DNA of 46,574 nucleotides, from assembly GCF_001194135.2 (NCBI RefSeq), contig NC_068999.1, forward strand, positions 39,063,309-39,109,882, read 5' to 3'. The position numbers and the translations under genes were made by a program. Below, one piece after another: positions 2,286 to 33,727 of this stretch (positions are counted from its first letter, which is position 1; every line of letters starts with the position of its first letter). This stretch comes from Octopus bimaculoides (taxonomy: Eukaryota). The notes below the pieces were generated by a model. It saw only the letters and a program-made list of their open reading frames with translations. It did no database searches and was not told where the DNA came from.

Positions 2286-2505
2286 AACTGGCAGAATCGT
2301 TAGCATAGCACACTGGGCAAAATACTTAGCGGTATGTCGTCTGTCTTTACGTTCTGTGTGCAAATTCCCCCGGGGTCAATTTTGCCTTTCGTCGTTTCGG
2401 ATTCTATAAAATAATAACCGGAGAACGCTGAGGACGATATAATTAACTTATCCACCTACCGCGAAATTGCTGGCATTGTACCAGAAACTGAAACCAGTAT
2501 TATTA
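2286..2505 (+). mobile_element. SINE family A (tRNA head), degenerate
   Basis: ACTGGCAGAATCGTTAGC head, CTTAGCGGTAT, TTTGCCTTTC core and GAAATTGCTGGC...TTGT tail, all shared with other copies in the window. Confidence 0.75.
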
Positions 2506-3681: not shown

Positions 3682-3880
3682 ACTGAAGGCTGAGTCGTTA
3701 GCACGTCAGCTAAAATGCTTAGCAGTATTTCGTCCGTTTTAAAGTTCTGAGTTCAAATTCCACTGGTTTCGACCTTCCATTTCTGAGTCGATAAAATAAG
3801 TAGCATTTGAGTACTGGGTTTGATGTAATCAACTTTAACCCTTTCTCCGAAATTACTGGCCTTGTGCCAAAATTTGAATC
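3682..3880 (+). mobile_element. SINE family A
   Basis: TCGTTAGCAC..AAATGCTTAG..TTCTGAGTTCAAATTCC (B-box), GTCGATAAAATAAGTA core, CCGAAATTACTGGCCTTGTGCCAAAATTTGAA tail. Confidence 0.85.
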
Positions 3881-4172: not shown

Positions 4173-4400
4173 GGTGGCGATCTGGCAGGATCGTTAGCAC
4201 GCCGGCGAAATGCTTAGCGGTATTTCGTCTGCCGATCCGTTCGGAGTTCAAATTCCGCCGAGGTCGACTTTGCCTTTCATCTTTCGGAGTCGATTAAATA
4301 AGTACGAGTTACGCACTGGGGTCGATATATTCGGTTTAATCCCTTTGCCTGTCCTTGTTTGTCCCCTCTATATTTAGCCCCTTGTGGGCAATAAAGAAAT
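4173..4400 (+). mobile_element. SINE family A, near full length (tRNA head; central domain resembles the Meta/MESC-type core)
   Basis: A-box-like TGGCAGGATCGTT, B-box GAGTTCAAATTCC, core GGTCGACTTTGCCTTTCATC..GTCGATTAAATAAGTAC, tail CTGTCCTTGT..CCTTGTGGGCAATAAAGAAAT then (AAT)n. Superfamily name is from memory. Confidence 0.9.
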
Positions 4401-4989
4401 AATAATAATTATTATTAACCATCCTATTATTTCAAGCTTCTTGCAGTTACACCACCATCTTATTTTAAACGTAACCCCTGATAACATTATCCAATGTATC
4501 CTTCCGTGAATCTAGCGCTATTCCTAGTAGGATATATAGTCAACAACCTTGCGGATCTCTAAGTGCTGAGTCTTAGAACTCCTAAAGGAATTCATGAAGC
4601 TTAGTAGGCATTGTTCAGTCTGTATCGTCAGCTTAATATTTGTTGAAAAAATCGCTATAAAACAAAACCACGATTATAATACTCATACGCCTCCTCTTTT
4701 TCTCCCTCTGGACCAGAAAGAATGAATTGCAAACAATTATTACAGTATTTACATATTTCACCAACACAAAGAAGAGCAACTATACAATAATACTTTATAC
4801 ATTATCGTTATTAAAAGAAGAATGAACTAAATAAATATGAGCTGATGATTACAAAGTGTTTATTGTACGTACGCTGCAGACATACGTACATGCAAATAGA
4901 CACAAAAACACACAGATATATACATACTCACGTACATGCACAACCGCTCGCACACATATATGCATATACATCGCCTGGACACACAAAGC

Positions 4990-5052
<63 letters not shown>

Positions 5053-6413
5053 NNNNNNNNNNNNNNNNNNNNNNNNNNNNNNNNNNNNNNNNNNNNNNNN
5101 NNNNNNNNNNNNNNNNNNNNNNNNNNNNNNNNNNNNNNNNNNNNNNNNNNNNNNNNNNNNNNNNNNNNNNNNNNNNNNNNNNNNNNNNNNNNNNNNNNNN
5201 NNNNNNNNNNNNNNNNNNNNNNNNNNNNNNNNNNNNNNNNNNNNNNNNNNNNNNNNNNNNNNNNNNNNNNNNNNNNNNNNNNNNNNNNNNNNNNNNNNNN
5301 NNNNNNNNNNNNNNNNNNNNNNNNNNNNNNNNNNNNNNNNNNNNNNNNNNNNNNNNNNNNNNNNNNNNNNNNNNNNNNNNNNNNNNNNNNNNNNNNNNNN
5401 NNNNNNNNNNNNNNNNNNNNNNNNNNNNNNNNNNNNNNNNNNNNNNNNNNNNNNNNNNNNNNNNNNNNNNNNNNNNNNNNNNNNNNNNNNNNNNNNNNNN
5501 NNNNNNNNNNNNNNNNNNNNNNNNNNNNNNNNNNNNNNNNNNNNNNNNNNNNNNNNNNNNNNNNNNNNNNNNNNNNNNNNNNNNNNNNNNNNNNNNNNNN
5601 NNNNNNNNNNNNNNNNNNNNNNNNNNNNNNNNNNNNNNNNNNNNNNNNNNNNNNNNNNNNNNNNNNNNNNNNNNNNNNNNNNNNNNNNNNNNNNNNNNNN
5701 NNNNNNNNNNNNNNNNNNNNNNNNNNNNNNNNNNNNNNNNNNNNNNNNNNNNNNNNNNNNNNNNNNNNNNNNNNNNNNNNNNNNNNNNNNNNNNNNNNNN
5801 NNNNNNNNNNNNNNNNNNNNNNNNATATTGTATGTATATACTGTATGTATATTTTGTGAATATATATATGTATATACATATATATATATATATCGTGTTT
5901 ATGTATATTTATAAATTATGTGTATATATTATGTAAATATAATATATATATATATATATATGTTTGTGTGTGTGTGAGTGTATTTGTTTGTGTGTGTGTG
6001 TGTGTGTATTGTATAAAATAGACGACTATGTTTTTGTTTCAGCCGTTTCATCAGGTTTCGCTGTTACCTTTTTCGTATGAGTACTCCGCTCTTTCTTTTC
6101 TGTTTTTCTAACATTGAACACTCTAGATCTAACAGGTAATATGCATAAAATATCATAATTTTCAATTGTGAAACGAATGATGTAGGATTATGTTGTCTTT
6201 CATCGTTATCAAGCTGAAGCAATGAGATTTGTTTCGACGTTACAAACAGAATTTGAAATTGAAATTTTAACCTACGTTTTGTTCCGTTATCAACGATTTA
6301 CCTATTTTCCATGTGACCAGGGCTTCCAGTTTGTTCTCATATTTTTTTTTTTTTTTGCCTCGTGCCATTATATAAGTATTCCTTCCTCGGTATGAGAGGA
6401 TTAGTTGGCATAG

Positions 6414-6445
<32 letters not shown>

Positions 6446-6650
6446 ATACTTTTCACTTCCCGAGCATTGAACTAATACATATGTTTGTTGTCTACACCAC
6501 CTGTTTTCGTCTTTTGTCTTTTTGTGAATTCTCTCCTTATATANNNNNNNNNNNNNNNNNNNNNNNNNNNNNNNNNNNNNNNNNNNNNNNTATATATATA
6601 TATATATACTCATACACACAGAAACACACACACACATATATATATATATC

Positions 6651-6682
<32 letters not shown>

Positions 6683-7329
6683 ACGTGTGTATATATGTAT
6701 CTACACGTGTGCCATTGGCGATTTGTTTTTCTTCTTTGGAGTTCTCCCTTTCTCCTTTCCGACAGAGCCATACTCCAAACGTCAAACTATCTCCCTTCAC
6801 CGAGCGTCAAGCTAATACCTTTCTTGTGCACGCCTCCTCACGTTCGTTTGTATTCGTTTTTTTGAATCAACCACACACACACACACATCACTGGTTGTTA
6901 AATTGTTCTCGAGTTTAAATGATTGTGATTTGTTAGTGATTGAAATGTTTAATATTCGTAGAATATTATTCCTATATTGTCTTTTATGGCGCTTTTAATA
7001 TTTTTGTAGCTATTTCACATAATACGCTAAACAACCAAATATACAGAACTTCAAAATCTTACTTTTAGCATGAAATGAGGTTGGCGAGTTTGGCTGGCCG
7101 TTTCTAATAATCAGGGATCAATGTGTTTGGTGTCGACGTAGGCGAGAAAATTTATATTTCTGGATAAGTAATCAAGGGTATACATTTGCAATTTGTATAG
7201 ACATTCTCAAAGTATAATTCAACCTTGTACTTTTCTGTGAATGTTTCTTCTCTTATCAATTGAATAGTCTTGTAGGGTGTTCTCTTGCATAGACATACGT
7301 AATAGCCGCACTCCACACACACACTGTCA

Positions 7330-7332
<3 letters not shown>

Positions 7333-7387
<55 letters not shown>
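7333..7387. repeat. (CT)n(CA)n compound microsatellite
   Basis: Direct. Confidence 0.9.
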
Positions 7388-8841
7388 TTGCTGTTTGTGT
7401 ATTTTTGTGTATGTCGGTTGTTTTTAAATAATGCGATGTATATGCTCATTTCATTTTGTTGAATTCTTCAGTTATTTCATTTCGAAGTGTATTTGTCAGA
7501 ATACCTGCTGATGATTTATTTGAGGTTCATCTCCTGGGATTGTTTTCCAGTTCTTCGTTTGTGGTGTATAATCTAAACTTCCTTTACCTAGACGAGAATT
7601 TAGATTCTAAATCTTCATCTAAGTTAGAAACTTTATATTACTTGAAAATTTCGTGTGAAAGTTAGCTTCTAATATCACATTGGTAGTAAGATGTACGTTT
7701 ACGATATAAGCTAAGTATGTAAAGAGAATATTGTATAATGGTTTGAATCGAGAAAGAGGAATACACGAATGCTTGGAAACAAATTAATACAAATATACAA
7801 CTCCTTCAATAGTATTACTAAAAACTATTTAGTAAGACAACGATTTCATTCCAAAAGTACAAAAAGAAACATTATGTTCATTGCACCGAACGCACTATTA
7901 CTTTCTATGCTTACCTGGAGACAGCAATTGTTTACACACATAAGAAGAGATTGGCAGCATCATGATTGAAAAAACGTTTAGATATTATTCTAACAAATAT
8001 GAATAAAAGAAATGTTGGTCTAATTAATTATTTATCTTTACGTTTACTTCAAAGACTCGGAATATGTTTCTGCTAGCATGGCAGCAATGTAGTCATTTCT
8101 GATATCTCTTGCAGCTAATAAATATNNNNNNNNNNNNNNNNNNNNNNNNNNNNNNNNNNNNNNNNNNNNNNNNNNNNNNNNNNNNNNNNNNNNNNNNNNN
8201 NNNNNNNNNNNNNNNNNNNNNNNNNATATATATATATGCACAAAAACACACATTACCTCTGTACAATATACACACTACAGACATTAAAAACAATTTCTTA
8301 GTATTACTCTTTTTTTGTATTTTTCACTTTTTAGATTATTTGTGTTTTAGAATTTTATCTATTTTTTCATTTACTAATCTTGCTATAGGTTTTTTAAAAA
8401 AAAGAAAACACTGTCCTCACCCCTCCCAAAACAAAATAGAACAAGTATATATGTCGTCAACGAAATAATACTTCAGAAGCGTAACTTATGTTGCTGTTGT
8501 GGAGAAATGTTTAACTGTGTATAGAGTTTTGCACAGTCGCCATTTTTGAAGTAATTCTTGTTTCAATATGGCTTCAGAATTAGCAGCTAAAAGTGTTTTC
8601 CACGGTGGTAGCTGTAGCCTCATTAACGTAAACAAACTCCCTGCCCAATTATTTTCAAACACGAGAAACACTCTTTAAAAAAATGCTAACAATGTGAACA
8701 CAAAACAAACAGACACAGCTTCAAGCATCAATATTTACAGTCGTAAAATTTGTAAAATGCAAAACATATATAAAAGAATGATATTGAATGTGTTACTTTG
8801 AAATATATAGTTTTAGAGACTCTAACTTGCTTTAGTAATAG

Positions 8842-8985
8842 GGTTGCAGCCGTGGCGGAGCACTGCCTTGCAGGGTTAGTCGGACAAATCGACATCAGGA
8901 CTTCATTTCACGTTGTCTGCTATTTATTCTATCGTTTTCTTTTGCCGAACCGTTAATTTCTAGGGACATAAACAAAGAACACACC
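8842..8985 (-). mobile_element. SINE family B 3' module, degenerate
   Basis: Reverse complement resembles 40030-40200 (ACCGCC..TTAGTCGAGCAAATCGAC; TTTGCCGAACCG..). Confidence 0.65.
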
Positions 8986-9111
8986 TGTGTTGGTATGCAA
9001 ATGCCCTGGTATCTTTGCCGGTCTCATTCTTTTCCATTCCTCACAGCTGGCACGAAAGAATGTCAGCCGAATTAAATCTCTGAAATAAAGTTGAATTAAA
9101 CAGACATCTTA

Positions 9112-9300
9112 TATTGGTTTCAACCTTTGCCACAAAGCCAGCAATTTCGATCCTCCAGTAAGCAACTGGTACTTATTTCCTCGACCCAGAAACGATAAAA
9201 ACCAAAATCGATCTTGACATAATTTGAACTCAGAATATAAAGACAGACAAAATACTGCTAAACTTACAGCACAGCGTGCTAACCATTCAGCCAGCTTTCC
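9112..9300 (-). mobile_element. SINE family A
   Basis: ATTTGAACTCAGAA (reverse B-box), GGTACTTATTT..TCGACCC (reverse core), GCTAACCATTCAGCCAG (reverse head). Confidence 0.85.
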
Positions 9301-10943
9301 GCTTTTATTCATTCATCTCAATTTACTTGCTCATATAACATCGATTCTGCTGTTTTACTCAATTCTGTAGATTGAAAAGTGTATAACTTACAAAAAAGAG
9401 AGGTATAAAACTCTCTATAACTGGAGTCTAGATGAAGAGCTTGCATTGCTTTATGTGTTAAGCTCGCGTTTTCTATTCAGTACTAAGATATGCTCTATGT
9501 AATGAAACATCTCCCTCTTTCTCCCTCTTCTGCCCCTACCCACATATTCAGGTATGTATCAATTGTAAAGGTGTATGCTGGGGGAGGGGAGAATTTTTAT
9601 ATCTAACTCTAAACATTTTAATTTTTAGTTTCAAGGAAACAAACATTTGACCTTCTCTCTGGAATATAGTAATAATTTCTCCATTTTGTTTCTGCACTTC
9701 TGTAGCTTCAACAGATGACAACTCTTAAATACAAACACGCGCACACTCACACATATACGTTTCGAAAGACACTTGCACACGTGTGTGGACATATTTATAT
9801 CATATAAACACATAGAAACTATGTCTCTCTCTTTCTCTCTATCTATCTCTCTCTCTCCCACACCCACCCATATACACGCATAAATATAAGGATATATATA
9901 TATATATACATGAGTGTGTAACTGCGGTTGTATGCATGCCAATACAATGATACCTGTTTTAACGTCGAATCATTTATTCACACACACACACACACACACG
10001 AACACACACACGAGTTTGTATGTGCTTATACATGTTTATATTTTCTATCTTTCACACAATCACACTCGCTGATATATATTTGTGTATATTTGATTGACGG
10101 TGATATATGTAAAAAAAAAAAATTCTGTTTTTGTTATTCAAAACCAGCAACCAATGAACATTTGCTTCTGCAAATATAGTTTTTGATAGTTATTTCGGTA
10201 CCTCTGCCCCAATTCCACCCTCAAAAATGATGTTATCTTATCGTTTGTAATAAAAAAATATATCCAAATGATGAATGGTTTCAAATGATATTTATCACAA
10301 TTCTGAGCACCATGCTCTACAATTTACCGTTTTGGATGAACAATATAGATTCATTGCGGGAGTAAATAACCATTTCTCAAGAATTATAGGAATAAATGAT
10401 GTTTAACATTTAAATATATGAGGGAAAAGGTTTCATTTTTTTTATATCTGTTTCAGACTGGAATTAATTTTAGAGATGAAAAATTCGATTCCTTTTTTTT
10501 CTATTTTGCTGGTGATATTTACATGTACAGTAAAGTACTATCGCTCTTATCTCGGACCCAGACGTCATTTAAATGTGGTGTAGTATAAATGTAAATATAA
10601 ATAAACTCTTGACTTGGGCGATTGTTACTCTGTTTCATGCTTTTATTCAACAAGCGGTTGCAATAGTGATATCATCTCATAATGTCGGTGCATGAGTCTC
10701 TGTGGCACGTTAGATTTGGTGGAATTTTGTAGATCAAAATAATCGAACACTTTCCATACATTTCGAGGCTTACGTTTATGTAAGACAACTGTATTTATAA
10801 TCGGTGTTTAATTAATATTCTTCTATGTGATATATGAATATAACTGTGTTTACATCGATACACACACCCTCACACTTCTACGAATATGAGAATAAAATTA
10901 TATATGCACGTTACATATGAAACTATATATGAATCTATCTCTT

Positions 10944-11008
<65 letters not shown>

Positions 11009-12369
11009 GTGTGTGCGTGTAGTGTCGAAATTTACGTGGAAACTAGTCGAAGAAGTGATATTAGTTTAATGCTTCATGCACAATGATATATTAAGCAACG
11101 AAGTGTTTGTAACGTTTCGAGAATAACACTTCTTCAAATAGGTTACATTGATGGAAGTAGGAACGTTCAGTGTTCCTTCTTTTTGAGTACTTTTCTACCC
11201 GTTCTTTAGATGTCCATTGTTGACAACGAAGTAGTAAACAGTGAAAAAATTAGCCAGGTAGAAAGAACACTAAACATCTATGTAATACCTTAAAATTATG
11301 TAAGATCCGTTTGGTGTTTCCTTTGAAACGTATGTAACGCTCACTGACGTCCTCTATTCACTGAAACGACTGATTGATAATTGCATTATTTATAACTTTT
11401 CTTGCAATATAGTGGAGTTGTAAAGTTGTATTTGTTTCGTAATTTCCATCTAATTCAATATGGGACGAAGTGAATTGCATACGTTGATTAATAAACTTTA
11501 TTGATTGAGTATCATCTCCATTGTGTTATCGATACAATCTGCTTGAAGCTAAACAATTGTTTGTACCACGACGATTTTCGATCTCACCACTTAAATATTA
11601 TTTTTATTGTTGTTATTATTATTATCATCATCATCATATGTATAATGCCATTAGGAATATCAATAATTATAGAAAACAATAGGTGCAAAAGACAAAAGAA
11701 TACGTGGCTCTTTTTCAGTCTGTCTGATAACGAAAATATTGTCTTATTTCAAATACCAGCGTCTGAGAGAGTTGTCAAACTCAATTGAACAAAAATGCCT
11801 TGAAATAGAACAAAAATTTATTATTGTTTTATAGCATAAATATAAAATAGTAATATCAATAATATTTTTTTAAGAAAAAAAGTGGTAAAATTGATATGTA
11901 TCGTATGTTATTATCATTTTAAATATTGCTATGTATCCGTAAAATATGAAACACCAATACTTATGAGAATTGAGTGTTTAAGTCAACTTGCAGACAAGAA
12001 AAATATTATGATGACAAAATATGATTAAAATATTATTTAATGTCCTTAATGTCTACACACTGTGTTGTTAGTCTTAATGCGAAGCAAAACACTCAGACAC
12101 ATACTTGCGTATATACATACGTACATACATACTAGTGAATAACATTGTAGTTCACTTGAAGCATTGTCGTACGAGAAGTAGGAAATGAGAAATAATGCAA
12201 GTTTCTCGAAATGCTGGAAATCTTTTAAAGACCTTTACATTTCGAGCGCAAGGGCTTATTTTCAGAAGGATACAATCAAGGAAATGTGTGTTAAAGGGCT
12301 ATTTTAAAAAATTTCAACCTTGTTAGAGGCTTTCGTTATATCTCCTTTCCTTCATCGTGTGTATTTAGA

Positions 12370-12425
<56 letters not shown>

Positions 12426-12788
12426 CACATACGCACACATACATATATACATGTGTGCGTGAGTGTGGGTGTGTATATATATATATATATATATACAAAG
12501 TTAATTGCAGAATAAAACCCTTAGGTCATCGACTCAAAAAGCCGTAGCCCACCAATGACCACATATAAGAAGTACAACATTGACCACAAAACCAAATTAG
12601 TAAAGGGAAGTCAAAAGTTTTATACATAAGAATAAAAATCGATTAAAAATACAATAGAATAATATAAATAAATAAACTGCGATTAAAAAGTTGATTAAAA
12701 TTATTAGAGACCGGTACAATTTCAGTAGAATAAATATATATATATATATAGAAAAAATATAGAGAACAAAAATAATACATAGGGAAAC

Positions 12789-13182
12789 GTAGCACAACAG
12801 TTCATTCGCTGAAGCTAATAGCCAAAAAAAAGTTCAAGATAAATAGTACGAAAGTTCAACTACCTCCCTCATGACAGCCAATTTAGTAGGTAAAATCCAA
12901 TTTGATAAACAGGAATACCGAAGTGCACGGGACAAAGCAACAACAGAACATCCAATGTGTGGCAAAGTAAAATCCAAGTTTCACCATTCCGCAGGTAACA
13001 TCAGTAAAGTCAAACTATAAACATCATTTACAGTGGATTACAAGTATAGGTGAAACACAAACACAGAACACCCATGGCCATTTCGGGCGTATATCACCGT
13101 ATTTAGGCCACAATAGTGCACAAATTGGTGATAACCCCTTCTTCAGGGTAAAAAAGACACACAGACATCAACGAAGTCACCA
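12789..13182 (-). repeat. Left arm of long inverted repeat (pLTR/retrozyme-like, HHR-bearing); probably extends outward to (TA)n near 12495
   Basis: Reverse complement matches 14849-15246 over about 395 bp, roughly 90% by eye; both begin TGGTGACTTCGTTGATGTCTGTGTGTCTTTTTTACCCTGAAGAAGGGG. Confidence 0.92.
13070..13150 (-). ncRNA. Type I hammerhead ribozyme motif, long stem II, palindromic stem III (H17=G in this copy)
   Basis: Minus strand: TACC-CTGAAGA-A-GGGGTTATCACC...GGTGATATACGCCC-GAAA-TGGCCA-TG-GGT; stem I ACC/GGT; stem III palindrome ATGGCCAT. Confidence 0.75.
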
Positions 13183-14520
13183 TTTCTCTTTATTATAGGC
13201 ACAAAGGCCTCATTTACAAAGAAGGGGGACATTACAAGGACAGACAACACAAAACGTGGGGTACATAGATCGAATTAGATGAAATGAGTAAATTACAATA
13301 TGATGATGGAATGGCTTACGAGTCCTCCAAAGCTCGCAGCTTCATTTCACAGTTTTCTTATACAGTTCTTATTCATTTTACTTTTTCTTTTTATGATTCT
13401 TTCGTTGTTATGTATGGTTTCAGCTCCTCCACCGTTACGACGCTTGGCAAAGTGTTGTAGCCCACATATAACCCACTTAGTTGGAAATTAAATCTGTTCA
13501 TTTCTCGCAGCTTCTTCGCTATCCATTCCTTCACCACTATTGCTTTTGTTTCATCATGAAACGTTCCGGGTTCTAATTTCAGTCGTACGAATCCTTTTAT
13601 TTTAGCTATCGTTTTTTTCCGTTTCTACACCCTTATTGTAGAAAAGTATTGTTCTAATATTTTTAAAATCTACCTTTCCGATTATCCTTCCTTCTGCATT
13701 CGCCTTTTCCTTCTGTTGCATCATCACATTCCACCAGTTTAGCCACCTCTCCTGTATTGTCAACTGTTTTTCCTGCTTCGTATCTTGGGTTTCAATCTTA
13801 GTTACGTTCTGTTCCTCGCTATCATTTCCATCTGCCATCATCTTTTTTTTCTTTCCCCTTTTCTTTCTTTTTGGGGACTTTGGCGGCGATTCAGTCCGCA
13901 TACGCTTTTTTTCTCCATGCTCCTCAGTCTCTTCCTGCTTTTCTTCTTCCTCTTCCTGTTCGGTCAGTACCATTTCCTCCTCACAGACCTCTGTTTCTTC
14001 TATTTTATCTTCTACGATTATTTCTCTGCGAGGACACACCGCTTGCATGTGATCTCTACTTCTGCATTTGTAGCATACTGGTTGCCTTCCCTCCACNNNN
14101 NNNNNNNNNNNNNNNNNNNNNNNNNNNNNNNNNNNNNNNNNNNNNNNNNNNNNNNNNNNNNNNNNNNNNNNNNNNNNNNNNNNNNNNNNNNNNNNNNNNN
14201 NNNNNNNNNNNNNNNNNNNNNNNNNNNNNNNNNNNNNNNNNNNNNNNNNNNNNNNNNNNNNNNNNNNNNNNNNNNNNNNNNNNNNNNNNNNNNNNNNNNN
14301 NNNNNNNNNNNNNNNNNNNNNNNNNNNNNNNNNNNNNNNNNNNNNNNNGGCCAATCTTATCTAGAACCCCCCAATTTAAGGCTAATATTAGCAAGTGCTT
14401 ATTATGCATTAGGGAATCCCTTTCCATTCTTAGGTCTTTTGGGCCGAAAACCTTGAATAAGTTTATCGAGGTAATCCCTTTTTGCAATCATAAATTTTCC
14501 TCCACCTTCCTAAAACTATA
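13183..14520 (-). mobile_element. ORF1/gag-like non-LTR retroelement relic with a CCHC zinc knuckle and no visible ORF2
   Basis: VEGRQPV-CYKCRSRDHMQAVC (CX2CX4HX4C at 14034-14075), then acidic and basic tracts; 3' end AATAAAGAGAAAT at about 13183; N-gap at 14097-14348. Confidence 0.7.
13391..14096 (-). pseudogene. Zinc-knuckle ORF1-like protein, C-terminal part, one frameshift in an A7 run at 13612-13618
   Basis: Removing one A joins ...ETEK to an open 73-codon frame TIAKIKGFVRLKLEPG...KPYITTKES* ending at 13391. Confidence 0.7.
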
Positions 14521-14848
14521 TAAAAATGGAAATAAGAACAAAAATAATCGTATTAGTGGTAATAATAGTAGTAATGGTGATAGTAATGGTAATGATAGAA
14601 ATAAAAATTAAAATAAAAAGACAAAAATACTGATATAAAAATAATAATAAAAATATGGATACAATGGTAGTATTTATTTTTTATCATGACTTACGTTGGA
14701 TTTGAAACCTAATAGTTTCAGTTACCAAACCTGCTTGACTATTCTAAAAGGTATACTAAAAATTAGATTTTTTTGTTTTTGGTTTATGGTTTAGTCCATA
14801 TTATTATTTATTTAAGCTTGCTCTCATAATTATAAAATCTTATTTGAC

Positions 14849-15246
14849 TGGTGACTTCGTTGATGTCTGTGTGTCTTTTTTACCCTGAAGAAGGGGTTAT
14901 CACTAATTAGTGCTCTATTGTGCCCTAAATACGGTGATATATACCCTCGAGATGGCCATAGGTGTTCTGTGTTTGTATTCCACCTATACTTGTAATCCAC
15001 TGTAAATGATGCTTATGGTTTGACTTTACTAATGTTACCTGCGGAATGGTGAAATATGGATTTTACTTTGCCACACATTGGATGTTCTGTTGTTGTTTTG
15101 TCCCGTACACTTCGGTATTCCTGTTTATGAAATTGGATTTTACCTACTAAATTTGCTGTCATGAAGGAGGTAGTTGAACTTTCGTATTATTTATCTTGAA
15201 CGTCTTTTATTGGCTATTGGCTTCAGCGAATGAACTGTTTTGCTAC
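14849..15246 (+). repeat. Right arm of long inverted repeat (runs into N-gap)
   Basis: Mirror of 12789-13182. Confidence 0.92.
14881..14964 (+). ncRNA. Type I hammerhead ribozyme motif (GAAA changed to GAGA in this copy; AUA triplet)
   Basis: TACC-CTGAAGA-A-GGGGTTATCAC...GGTGATATATACCCTC-GAGA-TGGCCA-TA-GGTG. Confidence 0.7.
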
Positions 15247-18219
15247 NNNNNNNNNNNNNNNNNNNNNNNNNNNNNNNNNNNNNNNNNNNNNNNNNNNNNN
15301 NNNNNNNNNNNNNNNNNNNNNNNNNNNNNNNNNNNNNNNNNNNNNNNNNNNNNNNNNNNNNNNNNNNNNNNNNNNNNNNNNNNNNNNNNNNNNNNNNNNN
15401 NNNNNNNNNNNNNNNNNNNNNNNNNNNNNNNNNNNNNNNNNNNNNNNNNNNNNNNNNNNNNNNNNNNNNNNNNNNNNNNNNNNNNNNNNNNNNNNNNNNN
15501 NNNNNNNNNNNNNNNNNNNNNNNNNNNNNNNNNNNNNNNNNNNNNNNNNNNNNNNNNNNNNNNNNNNNNNNNNNNNNNNNNNNNNNNNNNNNNNNNNNNN
15601 NNNNNNNNNNNNNNNNNNNNNNNNNNNNNNNNNNNNNNNNNNNNNNNNNNNNNNNNNNNNNNNNNNNNNNNNNNNNNNNNNNNNNNNNNNNNNNNNNNNN
15701 NNNNNNNNNNNNNNNNNNNNNNNNNNNNNNNNNNNNNNNNNNNNNNNNNNNNNNNNNNNNNNNNNNNNNNNNNNNNNNNNNNNNNNNNNNNNNNNNNNNN
15801 NNNNNNNNNNNNNNNNNNNNNNNNNNNNNNNNNNNNNNNNNNNNNNNNNNNNNNNNNNNNNNNNNNNNNNNNNNNNNNNNNNNNNNNNNNNNNNNNNNNN
15901 NNNNNNNNNNNNNNATATATATACATACACAAATACATTGGGTTCGAAAACTATTTGGGATGGAAAAAGTGCACGAGGCGCCTACAAGAGACATGGGTTC
16001 GTGTCCCATACGCAGTCTTCGAATAATTCCTTTCCGAAAATATTTTTTTCAACCGAATAATAATGTTTTTATGTCATTCGAGATTCATTTTTCCCAGACT
16101 TATTTCGCATTCCCTCGAAATGTTTCTAATTTTTATGCATTGAATTAAGCAATGTACATGTGTGTGTCTGTGTGTGAGAGTATGTGTGTGTGTGTGTGTG
16201 TAGGAAAAATGGTTTAGGATGTCCATATAAATAACGTTATGTAGGAAGAATACAGAGAAAAGGTAGAAAATATGTCACGTACATTAAAAATGTGTATGTT
16301 TATTATCAGAACTCGACCTTACATCTAGACTTACATAGTCACCGTTGAACAAAAGGCAATTATTCTGCCACACAATATACAACACACATATACACACATA
16401 CACACTCTATCACACGGACACATACGTAGGCACACACGCACACAAAGAATCTCACACACATACACGCACTTTCTCTCTCTCACACACACACACACTAACA
16501 CACGCACGCACCGAAAAACGCCAATGGTTTCTCAACATCACATTAGTGGATAAATATTCTTTATTCGTGAGGTAACCGGGATATCATTGGTTTCATATTG
16601 ACAGAGCTATCTCTGAGTAATTATTCAAGCCTGCACCTTGGGACGTTGGTGTTTATATTCTATGGCATTCAATATACTAAAAACACAATACTTACTCGCT
16701 AACTGTCTTAAACGTTCTCTGTCTATCTCTGTCTGTGTGTGTCTGTCTGTAAGTCTTTCTTTTTCGCTCTCTCTCACACTCACCCTGTATCTTTTCTAGT
16801 TACTTCTACATATTTTTCTCACCTTATTTATTTTTCTTTCATGTGTTTTAGCTTTATCAATTTTTATATAATTATTAATTAATTATTCAGTTAAATGATA
16901 TTATACACTGATATAGACGCACACATACACCTATTGACACAGACATACACTAGCACGCCAACACATATGCACACACTCACTCACATGTACACACACAAAC
17001 GCACATATAATCAAAATTTTGATTTTCACATTAATAAAAATAAATTTTCGAAAAATAATCTGTGATGCAATGATTTTTATGTTATAAATTCTGAAAAAAA
17101 AATGTGAAAAACAAACTAAGAATAAATATTTAAAATCTGTAAAAAGCTGGCTATTATGTTATCAGACCAGTGAACTAGAACAACAAAAAAATTTAAATAA
17201 TTGTTTGTTTATTGCTGTTTTTTTTTTTTTTTGTTCCTTTCCATTTTTTCTGTAGTGGCTTATTAAAATAGCATATTCATTCTTAAAATATAAATGAAAT
17301 GCAAAATAGTAAAGAATATGAAAGAATAAAACGTAAATAATTAGCAGATATTTTTTTTAAAAAGGCTATAGAGAAGAAATTATATGAACTGTGAAATTGA
17401 TGAATATTCTTAATTTTAATCTATTAGTTTCACAAAATCTTCTGTTGTTTGAAATAGAAGCTCTAATTTCTTTTTAAAAAAGAAAAACTTAATTTCTTTC
17501 TTTAATAGTACAGAATTGTTATACGTTGTTTGAAGTTAACAATCTGATCGGTTCAAAACCACAAAAGTGCTGTTTTGGCTGAGTGGCAAATCTAACATCT
17601 CATTTAGATACCGTCTTCCTACCATCATCCTGATGGTAATGTTATGTTCTTTCCGCTGAATCCTTGTTAAAGTATTTGAACGAGATTACTCGAGTTCTTT
17701 GTCATTCTTCACCTTCATTTAGTCTCTACTGTAAAGGACTGTGTATTCTGTCGATGACAGTCATACAAGATTTCGCATATATTAAGAATACACTAACGAA
17801 ATGCGGTTGTTTTAATCATGTCACTAATGTTGCTGGTTGGAATTCCCTAAACTTATAAGAGATAACACACATTTTCTAATGCACGTCATTTGTACAAAAA
17901 TGTATTGATTGATTAAATATTTAATCACGCTACAGATTAATGTACGGTATGTAAATTGGTTTAACCGACTCAAATAAGTAGTACGTTGTTTGTGATTTAA
18001 ATAGCTTTGTTTATAAAGCATTGTTTCGTAGAAAGGAAGGTTTAAAGTGGATCACAAGAGTCACGTTATTTTACTTGTGTGAAACATCGCTGATTTTATT
18101 TCCAAATGTAATTTCCAATACATTTTAGTCTGTTCATGCCTTATATCTCATTCTGTATTTTACATATAAATGTTGTACTGGAATTTCCCGTAAAAAATTA
18201 TTCGTTATTTATTAGTTAG

Positions 18220-18720
18220 GTGTTCGTGGACAAGCCATTACCTGAAAGCATCGTTCTGTCAGCACTCGGCCCCGACCTGGTTTTGGTAGATGAGAGTCAG
18301 AGACGTGTGGTTCTTAGGGAGCTTACTGTGCCATGAGCGGAAGCTGTTTGGCTATGAAGAGCTGATACTGAGATTCGGGAGAAGGGTTGCATCTATGAGC
18401 TGGTTGCATTTGAGGTCGGCTGCTGGGGTTTCCCAGCACCTTTTCTCAATAGGTTTCTGAAAGTGGCTGGTGTGTCTGCTGTGAGGAAGACCAAGGAATG
18501 TGGGGAGAAAGCAGTTGAGGGTACTGCTTGGATTACCAGGAGGATTATGAGTGCGGATAAGGCCACAAAACTGTCATGAGTCCGGTTGCAACACAATATG
18601 TCCAGCTGTTGCAGGCCCACTTTGTGGAGAGATACTGAGCTTAATGGGTCGAAATCTTGTCGAAACACGGCGTTCAGCTGAGGATTGCAGCCGGACAAGA
18701 ATTGGAGAACTGTGTTTTCT
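18220..18720 (+). mobile_element. 3' fragment of an R2-superfamily (HERO-like) non-LTR retrotransposon: restriction-like endonuclease relic plus 3' UTR
   Basis: VFVDKPLPESIVLSALGPDLVLVDESQRRVVLRELTVP* (cf. RPDxV...ELTVPWE), frameshifted into EIREKG..FEVGCWGF..AWITRR..* with stop at 18577-18579. Confidence 0.8.
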
Positions 18721-18741
18721 TGTACACACACACATATACAC

Positions 18742-18906
18742 ACGACGGGCTTCTTTCAGTTTCTGTCTACCAAATGCACTCACAGGGTATTGGTGGTCGG
18801 TCCGAGGTAATATTTCGTGACACTTGCCCGGGGTGCCACGCACATTGACTGAAGCCCGAACCATGTAGTTGGAAAGCAAGCTTCTTACCACACAGCCACG
18901 TTTGCG
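18742..18906 (-). mobile_element. SINE family B (tRNA head, CORE-like segment)
   Basis: Reverse complement: GTGGCTGTGTGGTAAGAAGCTTGC..GTGGCACCCCGGGCAAGTG..GGTAGACAGAAACTGAAAGAAGCCCGTCGT. Confidence 0.88.
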
Positions 18907-18943
<37 letters not shown>

Positions 18944-20029
18944 AGGACTGTACAAATCATGGACGAGTAGTACAATCACTGGCAAATCTTATCCAACATT
19001 TTACAGACGCTGTTGCCAGCAATACACGCGCTGAAATTTAAAACTTTAAATTCAATAATTGTTTGCACAAAAGTGTTAAGACTGTCACGTAAGAAGGCAA
19101 CTAAGCCTGTAAACAGCAATTGCAAGGTCTCCGGCCTCGTAAAGTAGCAGATTACCGTCTCCTACACAGATATTTAAATAAAGACACGCATACACACATG
19201 CTTATGAAAACGTATTCACACCGTTGTCACTACAAATGCTGAGTCGAATCTTTTACGCCCTCTGGAGACATTTTAAAATTATATCATCAAGAGTTTTTTT
19301 CCCTTGTAACATCTATAAGACTGAGAGTGACTTCACATGAGATTATCAAAGCGTCGACTATTCTGAGGACAAGATTAAGATAGAGAGTTCATGAATGATA
19401 GGGTGGCAGAGATTAGGAGGAAGAACCGACTCCAGCAGTAAAGGGATACTTTATTTATTTTGTAACGATGAAGGCCAAAGCTGGCCTTAGCCCATTAAGT
19501 CCCACTGTCCCATAAATATGACACTAAATGAAAACCTTATATAAACTATATCACATTGTCTCAGTGTCCTATTTATAGGACACCGAGTATTTCCATTTTT
19601 ACTTGAGGCAAAGGAGTTTTAATAATTATTTTTGTCTCCTTTTAACCTATTTTCAATCATCTGTAAAAGTTTAAAAGTAATATTCAGAAATTTAAGTAAT
19701 GTGGGACTTAATGGGTTACCCGTTATTTTAACTCACAGCGCAAAGAACTACACGAAATTCAATGTTACGTCCGATAAGATTAATAAACACATATTTCATG
19801 AGTATCGCTTTGGTAATTGTCACCTTGTTCTCACATCCATCATCACCAACATCATAATAATCGTCCTCATGAACGCCATATAATCTTTATTATTACTGCC
19901 GGTGTTACTGGAGGCTTTATTCACGCAGTCGTTGGTAATAAAATCTATAATGAATACTCTGCTATTGATTGCTAAAGTACGCGCTTAAAAATGCCATGAG
20001 TTAACGGTGAGAATATATAATTAGTCAGT

Positions 20030-20192
20030 TTTGCTAAATGCTTAGCGGCATTTCGTCCATATCTACGCTCTAAATTTAAATTCTGCCAAGGTCGACTTTA
20101 TCGGGTTCGATAACAAATATAGCAGTTAAGCACTGGGGTCCATTTAATCACCCCGAAATTGCTGGGCTTGTGCAAAATTTTGAAGCCAATAT
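20030..20192 (+). mobile_element. SINE family A, degenerate
   Basis: AAATGCTTAGCGGCATTTCGTCC..GGTCGACTTT..CCCGAAATTGCTGG tail. Confidence 0.8.
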
Positions 20193-20514
20193 ACAGGAGG
20201 CGAATCGTTTAACTGCATAGCGTTATCACTCCAGTACTTCCTCTCTATTCTGAGTTGTTGTCATTCTTCTTTGCATCTCCCCTCCCTCGCGTGTGTTATC
20301 TCTTAGCATATCATTTTGTTCTCGACAATTGCCTTCTATATATTACTATTTTTTACATGTCTGCTTGTCTCGCACGATACTTAATCCTATGTCTTCCTTT
20401 ATAAATTTTTATTGCTACTCAACTCCTCTCCGTAAATATTTTGTTCGCTCTCTCTTTCAATATTTGTAGCTCATCCTTAGCTTTCCTCGGTATATATGTC
20501 CTCCTCCTACTACC

Positions 20515-24610: not shown

Positions 24611-25317
24611 AACGAACATGGGTACAATCTTTTCCACAAAAACACTTCTGTGCGGACCCCTAGCATGGCTACAGAAAATAGAAACCTAAAAGTCATAATT
24701 CTTCAGATTTCTTCAAACAATTGGTTTCATAAATTAAAAATAAATATCTTAACATTTCAAGTGAAGCAAACCAAGAACTTATGTAGTATCGATTTGATTT
24801 TATTCCTCCTCAAAAAAACCTTGCTATTTTAAAAACATTCTAGAAGAGTCACTTGGTCTCTTGAACTCTAAAGACAACATCCAAGCTGATCTGGTATTAA
24901 AGCTCTCCATTCTTTTATGTTGTTCTATAAAAAAGAAAAGAAAAAAAATAATGAAGTACCATTATTTTTCGCGGAATTGATGTGAAGTGTTGGATGAAAT
25001 ACTTAGTTTCTTCAGTATTCTTTTACATCAATTTTGTTTGTCTGGCATTCTAACAACAATGTTTTTTGGCTTTTTTTCTTGTTCATTTCTTGACATTTAT
25101 TCCATCCAATATTTTTCATGATATAATTTTTTCTACATAATGAAATTATTTCAACAGCAATAGTCATATATTTTTTATTTTTACTTTGAAATTTAGGGTA
25201 TTTTTTATTGAATGTGTGTAGATTTTATTCGGTAATAACTATGAAGTATATCCGACCCTTAACGTTATAGTTATATTTGATGTTATTTAATGCGATGTGT
25301 GGCAGAAATGTCTTTTT

Positions 25318-25480
25318 CATCTTTTGGCACGAGGTCACCCATGTTGAGGGATGGGGTAAGTTGATTACATCAACCTCAATGCTCATTTGGTACCTATTTT
25401 ATCGATCCAAAAAGGATGAAAGGAAAATCTGACCTCGGTGGCATTTAAACTTAGAACATAAAAACGGACGAAATGCCGCA
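25318..25480 (-). mobile_element. SINE family A, head truncated
   Basis: GGTACCTATTTTATCGA..AGGATGAAAGG..GACCTCGG (reverse core). Confidence 0.82.
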
Positions 25481-33064: not shown

Positions 33065-33114
<50 letters not shown>

Positions 33115-33223
33115 TAGTTGTACTTGGGGATGGTCATATTGCCAGTTTAGCCAATAAAAACACACGCACTGTATATTTGGTGTTAATTTGTTTCAGCTTT
33201 ATATTACATTAATCTTATTTCGG

Positions 33224-33263
33224 CCAGAGTTCTTTCGTCACACTTCTGTGACCTCATCAGTGG
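33224..33263 (-). ncRNA. Minimal type I hammerhead ribozyme, catalytic core intact
   Basis: Minus strand: CCA-CTGATGA-G-GTCACA(GAAG)TGTGAC-GAAA-G(AA)C-TC-TGG. Stem I CCA/TGG, 6-bp stem II, minimal stem III, CUC triplet. Confidence 0.8.
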
Positions 33264-33392
33264 TCCTTTGTTTCCTTCCTTCTTATGTGTGTCTCACCTT
33301 GCTAAATATCAGCCATTTTGTATGGCTGATATTTAGCAAGGTGAGACACACATAAGAAGGAAGGAAACAAAGGACCACTGATGAGGTCACAG
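33246..33392. repeat. Perfect palindrome, 71-bp arms with 5-nt loop; right arm runs into an N-gap
   Basis: 33246-33316 is the exact reverse complement of 33322-33392. Confidence 0.95.
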
Positions 33393-33727
33393 NNNNNNNN
33401 NNNNNNNNNNNNNNNNNNNNNNNNNNNNNNNNNNNNNNNNNNNNNNNNNNNNNNNNNNNNNNNNNNNNNNNNNNNNNNNNNNNNNNNNNNNNNNNNNNNN
33501 NNNNNNNNNNNNNNNNNNNNNNNNNNNNNNNNNNNNNNNNNNNNNNNNNNNNNNNNNNNNNNNNNNNNNNNNNNNNNNNNNNNNNNNNNNNNNNNNNNNN
33601 NNNNNNNNNNNNNNNNNNNNNNNNNNNNNNNNNNNNNNNNNNNNNNNNNNNNNNNNNNNNNNNNNNNNNNNNNNNNNNNNNNNNNNNNNNNNNNNNNNNN
33701 NNNNNNNNNNNNNNNNNNNNNNNNNNN

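What the first reader, a model, noticed from the sequence alone, without database searches (positions are those of the whole stretch)
12789..15246. Composite element: divergent hammerhead-bearing ~400-bp inverted arms bracketing a zinc-knuckle ORF1-only unit
Seen: 12789-13182 and 14849-15246 are reverse complements, about 90% identical by eye, so not a simple assembly duplication. Both start at the same inner base (TGGTGACTTCG) and point outward, each carrying a type I HHR about 30 nt from the inner end. The 1666-nt spacer holds a CCHC-knuckle ORF whose AATAAAGAGAAAT 3' end abuts the left arm exactly. The left arm appears to run to a (TA)n at about 12495; the right arm enters a 667-N gap that also ends in (TA)n. 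Known: Penelope-like elements (PLEs) and retrozymes carry minimal HHRs in pLTRs, often in inverted arrangement, and DIRS elements have inverted termini plus gag. Inference: either a non-autonomous, ribozyme-bounded, gag/ORF1-carrying mobile unit, which I do not recognise as described, or an ORF1 retroposon inserted at the centre of a PLE fold-back. A minus-strand transcript through the ORF would be trimmed at the left-arm HHR shortly after the polyA-like signal.
Basis: partly seen in the sequence, partly recalled or inferred. Interest (0 to 1): 0.85.

Follow-up and report, generated by a model that had tools for sequence, protein, structure and literature searches.

The report
Inverted ribozyme-relic repeats flanking LINE fragment
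Two inverted copies of an octopus repeat that carry a decayed hammerhead-ribozyme motif flank a broken fragment of an ordinary LINE retrotransposon gene; this looks like nested retroelement debris in a gappy assembly, not a new kind of mobile element.

Summary
The inverted repeat is real: 12789-13182 against 14849-15246, 398 aligned columns, 92.7% identity, and the first 55 nt from a shared inner end are identical.

The "hammerheads" are relics. Each arm has a full type-I layout: CUGAAGA, a bulged A, a long helix II, a palindromic AUGGCCAU helix III and a short helix I. Each also has one disqualifying core base (left G17; right GAGA instead of GAAA). Rfam finds nothing.

The ORF belongs to an octopod LINE ORF1 family (tandem RRMs plus a CCHC knuckle). 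At 7 of the 8 family copies with readable downstream sequence, in Octopus sinensis, O. bimaculoides, O. vulgaris and Argonauta, an APE/RT ORF2 follows. The window copy lacks the N-terminal ~208 aa, has a frameshift and has no ORF2. It keeps the LINE's conserved 3'-terminal motif, which ends exactly at the left arm.

The right arm lies on an 898-bp mini-contig between two gaps. Sequence across gap 14097-14348 is neither in frame nor homologous.

Best reading: a Penelope-like inverted repeat pair joined end-to-end to an ORF2-less LINE fragment, by reverse-transcriptase template jump or by insertion at the fold-back centre. Whether the composite recurs could not be tested. Interest is low to moderate.

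The parts
12789..13182 (-). Left arm of the inverted repeat, read outward on the minus strand from its inner (5') end at 13182. Non-coding repeat, PLE-pLTR-like.
   Evidence: blastn 92.7% over 398 columns to the right arm; the repeat finder I1/I2/I10; alignment; no protein homologue in six frames.
14849..15246 (+). Right arm of the inverted repeat, read outward on the plus strand from its inner end at 14849. It is cut off by gap 15247-15914.
   Evidence: It lies on the 898-bp contig 14349-15246, which is bounded by gaps on both sides.
13070..13149 (-). Hammerhead-like relic in the left arm. Helix I 5' strand ACC 13149-13147; CUGAAGA 13146-13140; bulged A 13139; helix II with a 55-nt insert 13138-13085; GAAA 13084-13081; palindromic helix III UGGCCAU 13080-13074; position 17 = G at 13073 (forbidden); helix I 3' strand GGU 13072-13070.
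   Evidence: Descriptor scans; sequence. No Rfam hit. The MFE fold is not the hammerhead fold.
14882..14963 (+). Hammerhead-like relic in the right arm. ACC 14882-14884; CUGAAGA 14885-14891; bulged A 14892; helix II 14893-14948; GAGA 14949-14952 (A14->G, forbidden); UGGCCAU 14953-14959; A17 at 14960; GGU 14961-14963.
   Evidence: No Rfam hit.
13391..14096 (-). C-terminal ~235 codons of a LINE type-I ORF1 (pseudogene). Holds the CCHC knuckle, an acidic/basic linker and the conserved C-terminal domain. A frameshift in the T7 run 13612-13618 splits it into two frames (stop codons at 13602-13604 and 13391-13393).
   Evidence: 77-86% identity to O. bimaculoides P0001/P0002. The family profile matches positions 184-276 only. 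P0063 and P0005 alignments span both frames.
14034..14075 (-). CX2CX4HX4C zinc knuckle (CYKCRSRDHMQAVC).
   Evidence: Pfam zf-CCHC E=0.02, below threshold for the single copy. The family profile hits retroviral nucleocapsid and ZCCHC8 knuckles at E 7e-6 to 1e-5.
13183..13390 (-). LINE 3' UTR (208 nt) ending in the conserved family 3'-terminal motif GCCTTTGTGCCTATAATAAAGAGAAA(T) at 13208-13183, which contains AATAAA at 13194-13189. It abuts the arm exactly.
   Evidence: The motif GCCYTTGTGSC-N-ATAAA occurs 3 times in 157 kb on both strands, each time about 210-230 nt after the last LINE ORF: window, L001 15322, L002 15220. No ORF2 homology.
14097..14348 (.). Assembly gap (252 N, estimated length). 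The flanks are neither in frame nor homologous.
14349..14848 (.). Unassigned AT-rich 500 nt between the gap and the right arm. It has no homology to the ORF1 family, to LINE 5' regions or to anything else fetched. It contains an 18-nt tandem repeat (14543-14594) and an intron-like GTAAGT...TTTTAG pair on the minus strand (~14690 to ~14519).
15247..15914 (.). Assembly gap (668 N) that hides the outer part of the right arm.
12734..12750 (.). (AT)n about 40 nt beyond the last alignable base of the left arm. It is a candidate 3' end or microsatellite target of the arm element. A larger (TG)n(TA)n block lies at 12366-12495.
   Evidence: Sequence; TRF and the repeat finder. The (TA)n target preference of PLEs is from PMC8557442.

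Best explanation
This is a one-off nest or chimera of two ordinary retroelement types, not an autonomous or demonstrably mobile composite.

(1) The arms are two inverted copies of a non-coding repeat of at least 0.4 kb. It has the hallmarks of a Penelope-like-element (PLE) terminal repeat: a dimer-type type-I hammerhead layout near the 5' end (now inactivated by a different single core substitution in each copy), sense strands pointing outward, and microsatellite (TA)n at or near the outer ends.

(2) Between the arms lies a dead LINE derivative on the minus strand. It is the C-terminal half of a type-I ORF1 (RRM-RRM-CCHC family), frameshifted, with no ORF2, followed by a full-length (~208 nt) LINE 3' UTR. 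The UTR ends in the family's conserved terminal motif.

(3) That authentic LINE 3' terminus is joined, base for base and on the same strand, to the 5' end of the left arm.

The mechanism I favour (inferred, about 35-40%) runs as follows. During a PLE-type integration, primed from both sides of a break in a (TA)n tract, the reverse transcriptase copied the arm RNA to its 5' end. It then jumped onto the 3' end of a LINE RNA, giving a LINE-3'end/arm-5'end chimera. The second, inverted arm came from priming on the other side of the break. The two cDNAs were then joined with about 0.5 kb of filler.

Shown: the repeat, its motif layout, the LINE identity of the ORF, its truncation and frameshift, the absence of ORF2, the conserved 3' terminus and the exact junction. 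Inferred: PLE ancestry of the arms, the order of events and the template jump.
For: Inverted repeat and shared inner end.

Hammerhead-type layout in both arms, with a bulged nucleotide 5' of helix II and a palindromic helix III. This is expected 0.125 times per window by chance. The same traits are described for metazoan and PLE hammerheads, and pairs of such motifs 100-700 bp apart on opposite strands are reported in PMC4209133. Inverted 5'-truncated copies, (TA)n targets and short-read assembly trouble are described for PLEs in PMC8557442.

In-window analogue. A near-perfect fold-back at 33233-33392 has outward arms. It carries the only strict-descriptor hammerhead in the window (33260-33222, minus strand) and a (TA)n about 110 nt downstream. 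It lies ~2 kb downstream (same, minus strand) of a PLE RT/GIY-YIG-like remnant.

LINE identity of the ORF. There are 346 relatives, and all those carrying a name are octopod. The AlphaFold model matches tandem-RRM proteins. The knuckle profile matches nucleocapsid proteins. An APE/RT/zf-RVT ORF2 follows ORF1 in L001, L002, L005 (two copies) and L007 (three copies).

Window copy truncated, frameshifted and without ORF2.

Conserved LINE 3'-terminal motif exactly at the junction. No target-site duplication around the LINE piece or the arms.
Against: No other copy of the arm could be retrieved, so its family, its true 5' end and its PLE ancestry are unproven.

The arms have no RT/EN coding remnant. 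Rfam gives no hammerhead. Each copy breaks one invariant core position, and with only two copies the ancestral state cannot be inferred.

The right arm is on an 898-bp contig between two gaps, so its orientation and adjacency depend on scaffolding.

A template jump usually cannot be told apart from a precise TPRT insertion at the same site.

The 500 nt at 14349-14848 are unexplained.
Confidence: 0.4

Rival explanations
1. There was a pre-existing PLE-type fold-back: two head-to-head arms with little or no loop, like the one at 33233-33392. It was later hit at its centre by an ORF2-less LINE copy. The route was either target-primed reverse transcription using ORF2 protein supplied in trans, or capture during repair of a break at the fragile palindrome centre.
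For: The two arms end at exactly the same base. A zero-loop or 5-nt-loop fold-back of the same style exists in the window. The LINE piece ends in its authentic 3' terminus at the junction, as TPRT would produce. It is incomplete at the 5' end, as is typical of TPRT. Intact autonomous relatives exist in tandem arrays.
Against: No target-site duplication is visible. The two relatives with clear flanks sit in microsatellites, not in unique sequence. The 500 nt at 14349-14848 are not LINE-like. Hitting the exact centre by chance is unlikely unless the centre is a hotspot.
Confidence: 0.25
2. Scaffolding artefact or chance proximity. The right arm belongs to another copy of a dispersed repeat, and the 898-bp contig was misplaced or misoriented. 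In that case 'arm-ORF-arm' is not a real contiguous structure.
For: Contig 14349-15246 is bounded by gaps on both sides. The flanks of gap 14097-14348 are unrelated and out of frame. PLE tandem and inverted structures are known to break short-read assemblies (PMC8557442). The window has 10 gaps, many of them at microsatellites.
Against: The arms differ by 7.3% and have unrelated inner flanks, so this is not a collapsed duplicate or a haplotig. Mate-pair scaffolding placed the contig within about 1.7 kb.
Confidence: 0.15
3. One reading: a recurrent, non-autonomous composite retroelement. An ORF2-less LINE (ORF1 plus 3' UTR) is fused to a hammerhead-bearing PLE-type terminal repeat, and the unit inserts with the PLE-style inverted copy.
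For: ORF1 and the left arm are on the same strand and joined end to end. The layout of an inverted copy upstream plus a unit downstream matches the usual PLE insertion layout (PMC8557442). A PLE with an upstream zf-CCHC ORF and a 3' HHR exists in Chara (PMC8557442). An ORF1-only relative exists in a gapless O. vulgaris locus (L006).
Against: If the right arm were just a 5'-truncated inverted copy of a longer unit, its truncation point would have to coincide exactly with the LINE 3' terminus. The ORF1 here is truncated and frameshifted. The arms are absent from about 131 kb around six other ORF1-family loci. No inverted arms flank ORF1 in L004 or L006.
Confidence: 0.08
4. The arms are long terminal inverted repeats of a DNA transposon or fold-back element that captured a LINE fragment internally.
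For: Arms of about 0.4 kb or more with a sharp inner boundary and an unrelated 1.7-kb interior.
Against: No transposase is present anywhere in the window. The outer ends and any target-site duplication are hidden by a gap. The exact LINE 3' terminus at the inner boundary and the hammerhead layout are unexplained by this model.
Confidence: 0.05

Closest known systems
Penelope-like element (PLE) pseudo-LTRs with minimal or dimeric type-I hammerheads in inverted arrangement (Cervera & de la Pena 2014, PMC4209133; Craig et al. 2021, PMC8557442)
   Same: Outward-pointing inverted copies of a terminal segment. A hammerhead-type motif on the outward strand, with a bulged nucleotide 5' of helix II, a long helix II, a short helix I and a palindromic helix III. 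Microsatellite (TA)n at the outer side. Associated short-read assembly gaps.
   Different: There is no RT/GIY-YIG coding sequence in or between the arms. Both motif copies break an invariant core base. Helix II carries an unusually long 55-nt insert. The interior is LINE-derived.
LINE type-I ORF1p (RRM immediately upstream of a CCHC knuckle; Khazina & Weichenrieder classification as summarised in PMC4120745)
   Same: The family model has two tandem RRM-like domains followed by one CCHC knuckle. At seven of the eight family copies with readable downstream sequence, an APE-RT-zfRVT ORF2 follows ORF1.
   Different: The window copy retains only the knuckle, the linker and the C-terminal domain. 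The family has an extra conserved C-terminal domain of unknown function and a single knuckle, where many type-I ORF1s have three.
HAL1 ('half-L1') ORF1-only non-autonomous LINE derivatives of mammals
   Same: ORF1 is followed directly by the LINE 3' UTR, with ORF2 missing.
   Different: It is unknown whether this deletion defines a propagating family here. This copy is truncated and frameshifted, and it belongs to a different LINE lineage and ORF1 type.
Chimeric retrocopies made by reverse-transcriptase template switching (e.g. U6-L1 chimeras; end-to-end template jumping of R2 RT; from my own knowledge)
   Same: The 3' end of one RNA-derived unit is joined precisely to the 5' end of another in the same orientation.
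   Different: The enzyme and the event are inferred, not shown. No poly(A) tract or extra nucleotides mark the junction.
Animal non-LTR retrozymes (PMC7229834; bioRxiv 10.64898/2026.07.22.740005)
   Same: Non-coding units that carry a type-I hammerhead and are linked to PLEs.
   Different: Retrozymes are head-to-tail tandem repeats of about 170-400 nt. Here there are two inverted copies and no tandem array.

Membership tests
Hammerhead ribozyme, type I | Core C3-U4-G5-A6-N7-G8-A9 | tested here: met
   CUGAAGA at 13146-13140 (-) and 14885-14891 (+).
Hammerhead ribozyme, type I | Core G12-A13-A14 plus the A15.1-U16.1 pair | tested here: inconclusive
   The left arm has GAAA...U (met). The right arm has GAGA, i.e. 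A14->G (not met).
Hammerhead ribozyme, type I | Cleavage-site nucleotide H17 (not G) | tested here: inconclusive
   Left arm G at 13073 (not met). Right arm A at 14960 (met). With two copies the ancestral state is undetermined.
Hammerhead ribozyme, type I | Three helices around the core, open at helix I | tested here: inconclusive
   The descriptor is satisfied: helix I 3-4 bp; helix II with 3-4 closing bp plus a 7-bp distal stem; helix III 2 bp plus a GGCC loop. The MFE fold differs and the z-scores are -0.9 and -0.5. With only two copies no covariation test is possible.
Hammerhead ribozyme, type I | Match to the Rfam hammerhead covariance models | tested here: not met
   No hit at gathering score or at E<=10. 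Rfam also misses the strict-descriptor motif at 33260, so this test is insensitive to minimal PLE-type motifs.
Hammerhead ribozyme, type I | Self-cleavage | not testable with these tools
   Needs in vitro transcription of monomer and dimer constructs.
Penelope-like element (PLE) | PLE-type RT plus GIY-YIG endonuclease ORF | tested here: not met
   No protein homologue of the arms in six frames. No RT or EN homology in 12.3-16.2 kb.
Penelope-like element (PLE) | Pseudo-LTR, tandem or inverted terminal copies with 3' ends outward | tested here: met
   Inverted arms with the motif-bearing strand pointing outward. The definition is from PMC8557442.
Penelope-like element (PLE) | Hammerhead motif in the pLTR | tested here: inconclusive
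   See the hammerhead rows above: a relic layout with one core violation per copy.
LINE type-I ORF1p | CCHC zinc knuckle | tested here: met
   CX2CX4HX4C at 14075-14034. The family profile matches nucleocapsid and ZCCHC8 knuckles at E~1e-5.
LINE type-I ORF1p | At least one RRM immediately upstream of the knuckle | tested here: inconclusive
   Met for the family: the AlphaFold model of P0002 (pLDDT 78) matches tandem-RRM proteins. In the window copy that region is missing or hidden in the gap.
LINE type-I ORF1p | Encoded upstream of an APE/RT ORF2 in a LINE | tested here: inconclusive
   Met for relatives in L001, L002, L005 (x2) and L007 (x3). Not met in the window, which has no ORF2 homology.
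ORF1-only (HAL1-like) LINE derivative | ORF1 followed directly by the LINE 3' UTR and terminus | tested here: met
   208 nt from the ORF1 stop to the conserved terminal motif. ORF2-bearing relatives have 212-232 nt after the ORF2 stop.
ORF1-only (HAL1-like) LINE derivative | Multiple copies sharing the same ORF2 deletion (a propagating family) | not testable with these tools
   No octopus nucleotide database was available. One other ORF1-only locus was seen in O. vulgaris (L006), but it is only ~27% identical.
Animal retrozyme | Head-to-tail tandem repeats each carrying a type-I hammerhead | tested here: not met
   No tandem array. The two copies are inverted.
DIRS retrotransposon | Tyrosine recombinase plus RT/RNase H ORFs between the inverted termini | tested here: not met
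   Only a LINE ORF1 fragment lies between the arms.
DNA transposon or fold-back element with long TIRs | Defined outer termini flanked by a target-site duplication; transposase in autonomous copies | not testable with these tools
   The right outer end lies in gap 15247-15914. No transposase is present in the window.

The most novel reading that the evidence does not exclude
The arm-ORF1-arm structure is one copy of a recurrent, non-autonomous hybrid retroelement of octopuses. An ORF2-less LINE (type-I ORF1 plus LINE 3' UTR) is fused to a hammerhead-bearing Penelope-type terminal repeat, and the unit is mobilised with PLE-style inverted insertion architecture. That would make it an ORF1-carrying element that borrows the termini of a different retroelement class.
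Probability: 0.08. Interest if true: 0.7.

Novelty: new member of a known kind. Interest (0 to 1): 0.3.

Why it matters
As it stands this is a worked example of how repeat nests in a gappy cephalopod assembly can look like a new element. Three points may interest specialists.

(1) It shows an octopus hammerhead variant with a 55-nt helix II insert and an 8-nt palindromic helix III that Rfam models do not see.

(2) It documents an octopod-wide LINE lineage with an RRM-RRM-CCHC ORF1, a conserved 3'-terminal motif, microsatellite targets and tandem arrays, plus ORF2-less (HAL1-like) derivatives.

(3) It has a base-precise junction between a LINE 3' terminus and the 5' end of a PLE-type repeat. 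If that junction recurs, it would be evidence of template switching or hybrid-element formation between two retroelement classes.

None of this is established beyond the single locus.

Tried and rejected
(1) Rfam at gathering score and at E<=10 gave no ribozyme in the arms. Rfam also missed the strict motif at 33260, so I wrote my own descriptor with shuffle controls.

(2) Finding other arm copies failed by every route. A six-frame concatenated protein query found nothing. Exact look-ups of the arm ORFs found nothing. Two exact-pattern scans of JGI metagenomes found nothing. blastn against seven fetched octopod loci, ~152 kb, found nothing.

(3) Testing the arm as a LINE-tail SINE: there is no significant similarity to the LINE 3' UTRs and no tRNA.

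(4) Searches for target-site duplications around the left arm, the right arm and the LINE piece found none.

(5) Testing 14349-14848 as a LINE 5' UTR or the ORF1 N-terminus found no homology.

(6) A 'simple PLE unit plus inverted truncated copy' model looked attractive. I demoted it once the conserved LINE 3' terminus was found exactly at the arm boundary.

(7) Pfam did not confirm the PLE remnant at 35.4-36.2 kb. It rests on motifs read by eye plus one weak homologue.

(8) P0001, P0002 and P0129 could not be located on contigs.

(9) Two DNA-search runs failed on pattern syntax and were replaced by a regex script.
Full report
OBSERVATION.
The inverted repeat is real. Positions 12789-13182 and 14849-15246 align as reverse complements over 398 columns at 92.7% identity with two small indels, and there are no other copies in the window. 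Read outward, both arms begin TGGTGACTTCG, and the first 55 nt are identical. The sequences just inside the two arms are unrelated, so the inner boundary is sharp. The right arm stops at gap 15247-15914 (668 N), so its outer extent is unknown. In the left arm an (AT)n at 12734-12750 lies about 40 nt beyond the last alignable base.

THE GAP (tested first, as asked).
The window has 10 gaps. The right arm plus 500 nt of spacer form an 898-bp contig (14349-15246) with gaps on both sides. Its placement and orientation therefore rest on scaffolding alone. At the nominal 252 N the minus-strand reading frames on the two sides of gap 14097-14348 differ. The ORF's relatives need about 208 more residues (~620 nt) upstream of the first readable codon. 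A profile of 88 family members matches the window only at profile positions 184-276 (13764-14099). It matches nothing in 14349-14848 or elsewhere. Continuity across the gap is not supported. Either the ORF is 5'-truncated or the gap is much larger than estimated.

THE 'HAMMERHEADS'.
Rfam finds no ribozyme at gathering score in the window, nor at E<=10 in 12500-15246. I wrote a type-I descriptor: helix I of at least 3 bp, CUGANGA, an optional bulge, helix II closed by at least 3 bp, GAAA, A15.1...U16.1 enclosing at most 10 nt, and H17.

With no deviation the descriptor finds a single site in the window, at 33260 (-). With one deviation it finds both arms plus three background sites.
- Left arm (13149-13070, minus strand): ACC-CUGAAGA-A-GGG[55 nt, with an inner 7-bp stem UAUCACC/GGUGAUA]CCC-GAAA-UGGCCAU-G-GGU.
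- Right arm (14882-14963): the same layout, but GAGA instead of GAAA (A14->G), with A at position 17.

Helix III (AUGGCCAU) is an 8-nt palindrome. PMC4209133 describes a short helix III capped by a small palindromic loop for metazoan type-I hammerheads, which are thought to act as dimers. It also describes the unpaired nucleotide 5' of helix II for PLE hammerheads.

In 40 dinucleotide shuffles, sites with at most one deviation average 3.3 per window (6 observed). With a palindromic helix III they average 0.125 per window, and both arms have one. The MFE folds are not the hammerhead fold and are not unusually stable. Rfam also fails to report the strict motif at 33260, so its silence is weak evidence.

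My reading is that the arms carry a decayed hammerhead-type motif. Neither present copy should cleave. With two copies the ancestral state cannot be inferred.

THE ORF.
The minus-strand ORF has one CX2CX4HX4C knuckle (14075-14034). Its closest relatives are two O. bimaculoides proteins at 77-86% identity. An exhaustive HMMER search with one of them finds 346 representatives, and all those carrying a name are octopod: O. bimaculoides, O. sinensis, O. vulgaris and Argonauta hians. An AlphaFold model built on a 26-sequence alignment (pLDDT 78) matches tandem-RRM proteins such as NONO/SFPQ, HuC RBD1-2 and U2AF65. The family profile matches retroviral nucleocapsid and ZCCHC8 knuckles. RRMs directly upstream of a CCHC knuckle define the type-I LINE ORF1p (PMC4120745).

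At every family locus that carries an ORF2, the ORF2 follows ORF1 closely (39 nt in Argonauta) and is of the APE / RVT_1 / zf-RVT type. This holds for O. sinensis L001, Argonauta L002, O. bimaculoides L005 (two tandem copies) and O. vulgaris L007 (three tandem copies). One gapless O. vulgaris locus (L006) has ORF1 with no ORF2.

The window copy is dead. It lacks the N-terminal half. A frameshift in the T7 run at 13612-13618 splits the C-terminal domain into another frame; alignments of P0063 and P0005 span both frames. There is no ORF2 homology anywhere in the window.

THE JUNCTION.
The 208 nt after the ORF1 stop end in GCCTTTGTGCCTATAATAAAGAGAAA(T). The pattern GCCYTTGTGSC-N-ATAAA occurs only three times in 157 kb on both strands. 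The sites are here, in L001 232 nt after the ORF2 stop, and in L002 212 nt after the ORF2 stop. In L001 the motif is followed at once by (ATT)n, and the same microsatellite precedes the LINE's 5' end. So the motif marks the LINE's 3' terminus.

The spacer therefore holds an ORF2-less LINE derivative (ORF1 plus a full 3' UTR, HAL1-like) whose authentic 3' end meets the left arm's inner end base for base. It lies on the same strand as the left-arm motif. No target-site duplication is detectable around the arms or the LINE piece. The arm is not detectably related to the LINE 3' UTRs.

WHAT THE ARMS ARE.
No other copy could be retrieved, so their family is inferred. The features point to a Penelope-like terminal repeat. 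These features are a hammerhead-type motif on the outward strand, the inverted outward arrangement, nearby (TA)n and associated assembly gaps. PMC4209133 reports pairs of minimal hammerheads 100-700 bp apart on opposite strands. PMC8557442 describes inverted 5'-truncated copies forming inverted repeats, (TA)n targets and short-read assembly problems.

The window holds an independent analogue. A near-perfect fold-back at 33233-33392 has arms that point outward and carries the strict hammerhead. A (TA)n follows about 110 nt later. About 2 kb upstream on the same strand lies an RT/GIY-YIG-like remnant (...FYRKPF...; C..C..YVVYEIICGKCGASYIGSTRKL..KEH..EAILIHQKKPQISN). That remnant is identified by motifs read by eye and one weak homologue only.

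MECHANISM.
One model treats the right arm as a 5'-truncated inverted copy of one longer ORF1-plus-arm unit. It would need the truncation point to coincide exactly with the LINE terminus, so I rank it low. Two models fit the end-to-end junction.
(a) The reverse transcriptase jumped from the 5' end of the arm RNA onto the 3' end of a LINE RNA during a two-sided PLE-type integration.
(b) An ORF2-less LINE copy later inserted, by TPRT or repair, at the centre of a pre-existing fold-back.

I favour (a) slightly. There is no target-site duplication, and the two relatives with clear flanks sit in microsatellites rather than unique sequence. The data do not separate the two models. A scaffolding error remains possible.

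NOVELTY.
PLE inverted repeats with hammerheads, type-I ORF1 LINEs, ORF1-only LINE derivatives and template-switch chimeras are all known kinds. A PLE with an upstream zf-CCHC ORF and a 3' HHR is also on record (PMC8557442). The locus is a new instance, possibly a chimera, of known kinds. A simple genome-wide BLASTN of the two junctions would settle it, and I could not run that here.

Noticed in passing
window 33222-33392 (minus strand), with (TA)n at about 33066-33116: Near-perfect fold-back: arms of ~67-70 nt, a 5-nt loop ACAAA, cut off by gap 33393-33727. On the minus strand its outward arm carries the only strict-descriptor type-I hammerhead in the window: CCA-CUGAUGA-G-GUCACA-GAAG-UGUGAC-GAAA-GAAC-UC|UGG. 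A (TA)n follows about 110 nt later. Rfam reports only spurious miRNA-hairpin hits there.
   Followed up: partly
window about 35380-36150 (minus strand, two frames): Decayed Penelope-like RT C-terminus and GIY-YIG-like endonuclease remnant (FYRKPF...; CTLSNCP..C..YVVYEIICGKCGASYIGSTRKL..KEHIQAH..EAILIHQKKPQISN). It lies ~2 kb upstream of the 33.3-kb hammerhead on the same strand. Pfam gives no hit. One ENA homologue was found (P0152, E 2.4e-8).
   Followed up: partly
window 2288-2493, 3688-3878, 4174-4333, 9147-9305, 25315-25474, 37683-37843, 41768-41993: Copies of a short interspersed repeat (~130-200 bp) shared at 67-86% identity with several sites in the O. sinensis locus L001 (16662-16861, 21823-22021, 23006-23145). 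Probably an octopus SINE family.
   Followed up: no
L007 (O. vulgaris OX597840.1) 4900-19050; L005 (O. bimaculoides CM046605.1) 10060-20290: Full-length LINEs of the same ORF1 family sit in head-to-tail tandem arrays: three copies at ~5.28-kb spacing in L007 and two in L005.
   Followed up: partly
L001 (O. sinensis CM016872.1) 9720-9780 and 15346-15375: The LINE in L001 is flanked on both sides by (ATT)n, which suggests this LINE lineage inserts into microsatellites.
   Followed up: partly
L006 (O. vulgaris OX597815.1) 9998-11080: An ORF1-family gene with no ORF2 homology within 10 kb downstream in a gapless assembly. It could be a second ORF1-only derivative or a domesticated copy. A 151-nt-arm palindrome (9359-9811) lies just upstream.
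   Followed up: partly
L003 (ENA ERZ21867824 ctg96447l) 4915 (+) and 5725 (-): Two strict-descriptor hammerhead motifs about 800 bp apart on opposite strands, in a contig that also encodes RVT_1 and HTH_animal-like products. This is another example of the dual opposite-strand arrangement.
   Followed up: no
window about 14519-14690 (minus strand): An intron-like pair: a perfect GTAAGT donor, then an AT-rich ~171 nt, then a TTTTAG acceptor, in the unassigned 500 nt next to the right arm. By composition, GTAAGT alone is expected about 0.18 times per 500 nt of one strand (hand estimate, no tool call). No transcript evidence is available.
   Followed up: no
window 15935-16010: tRNA B-box-like strings (GGGTTCGAAAAC, GGGTTCGTGTCCC) just right of gap 15247-15914. 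ARAGORN calls no tRNA. Possibly a SINE head.
   Followed up: partly
ORF1 family C-terminus (e.g. window 13391-13620 minus strand; ends of P0005, P0008, P0022, P0026): A conserved C-terminal domain (..LIEKxxxxKLKExFPxD..) after the low-complexity linker. It has no Pfam match and unknown function.
   Followed up: no
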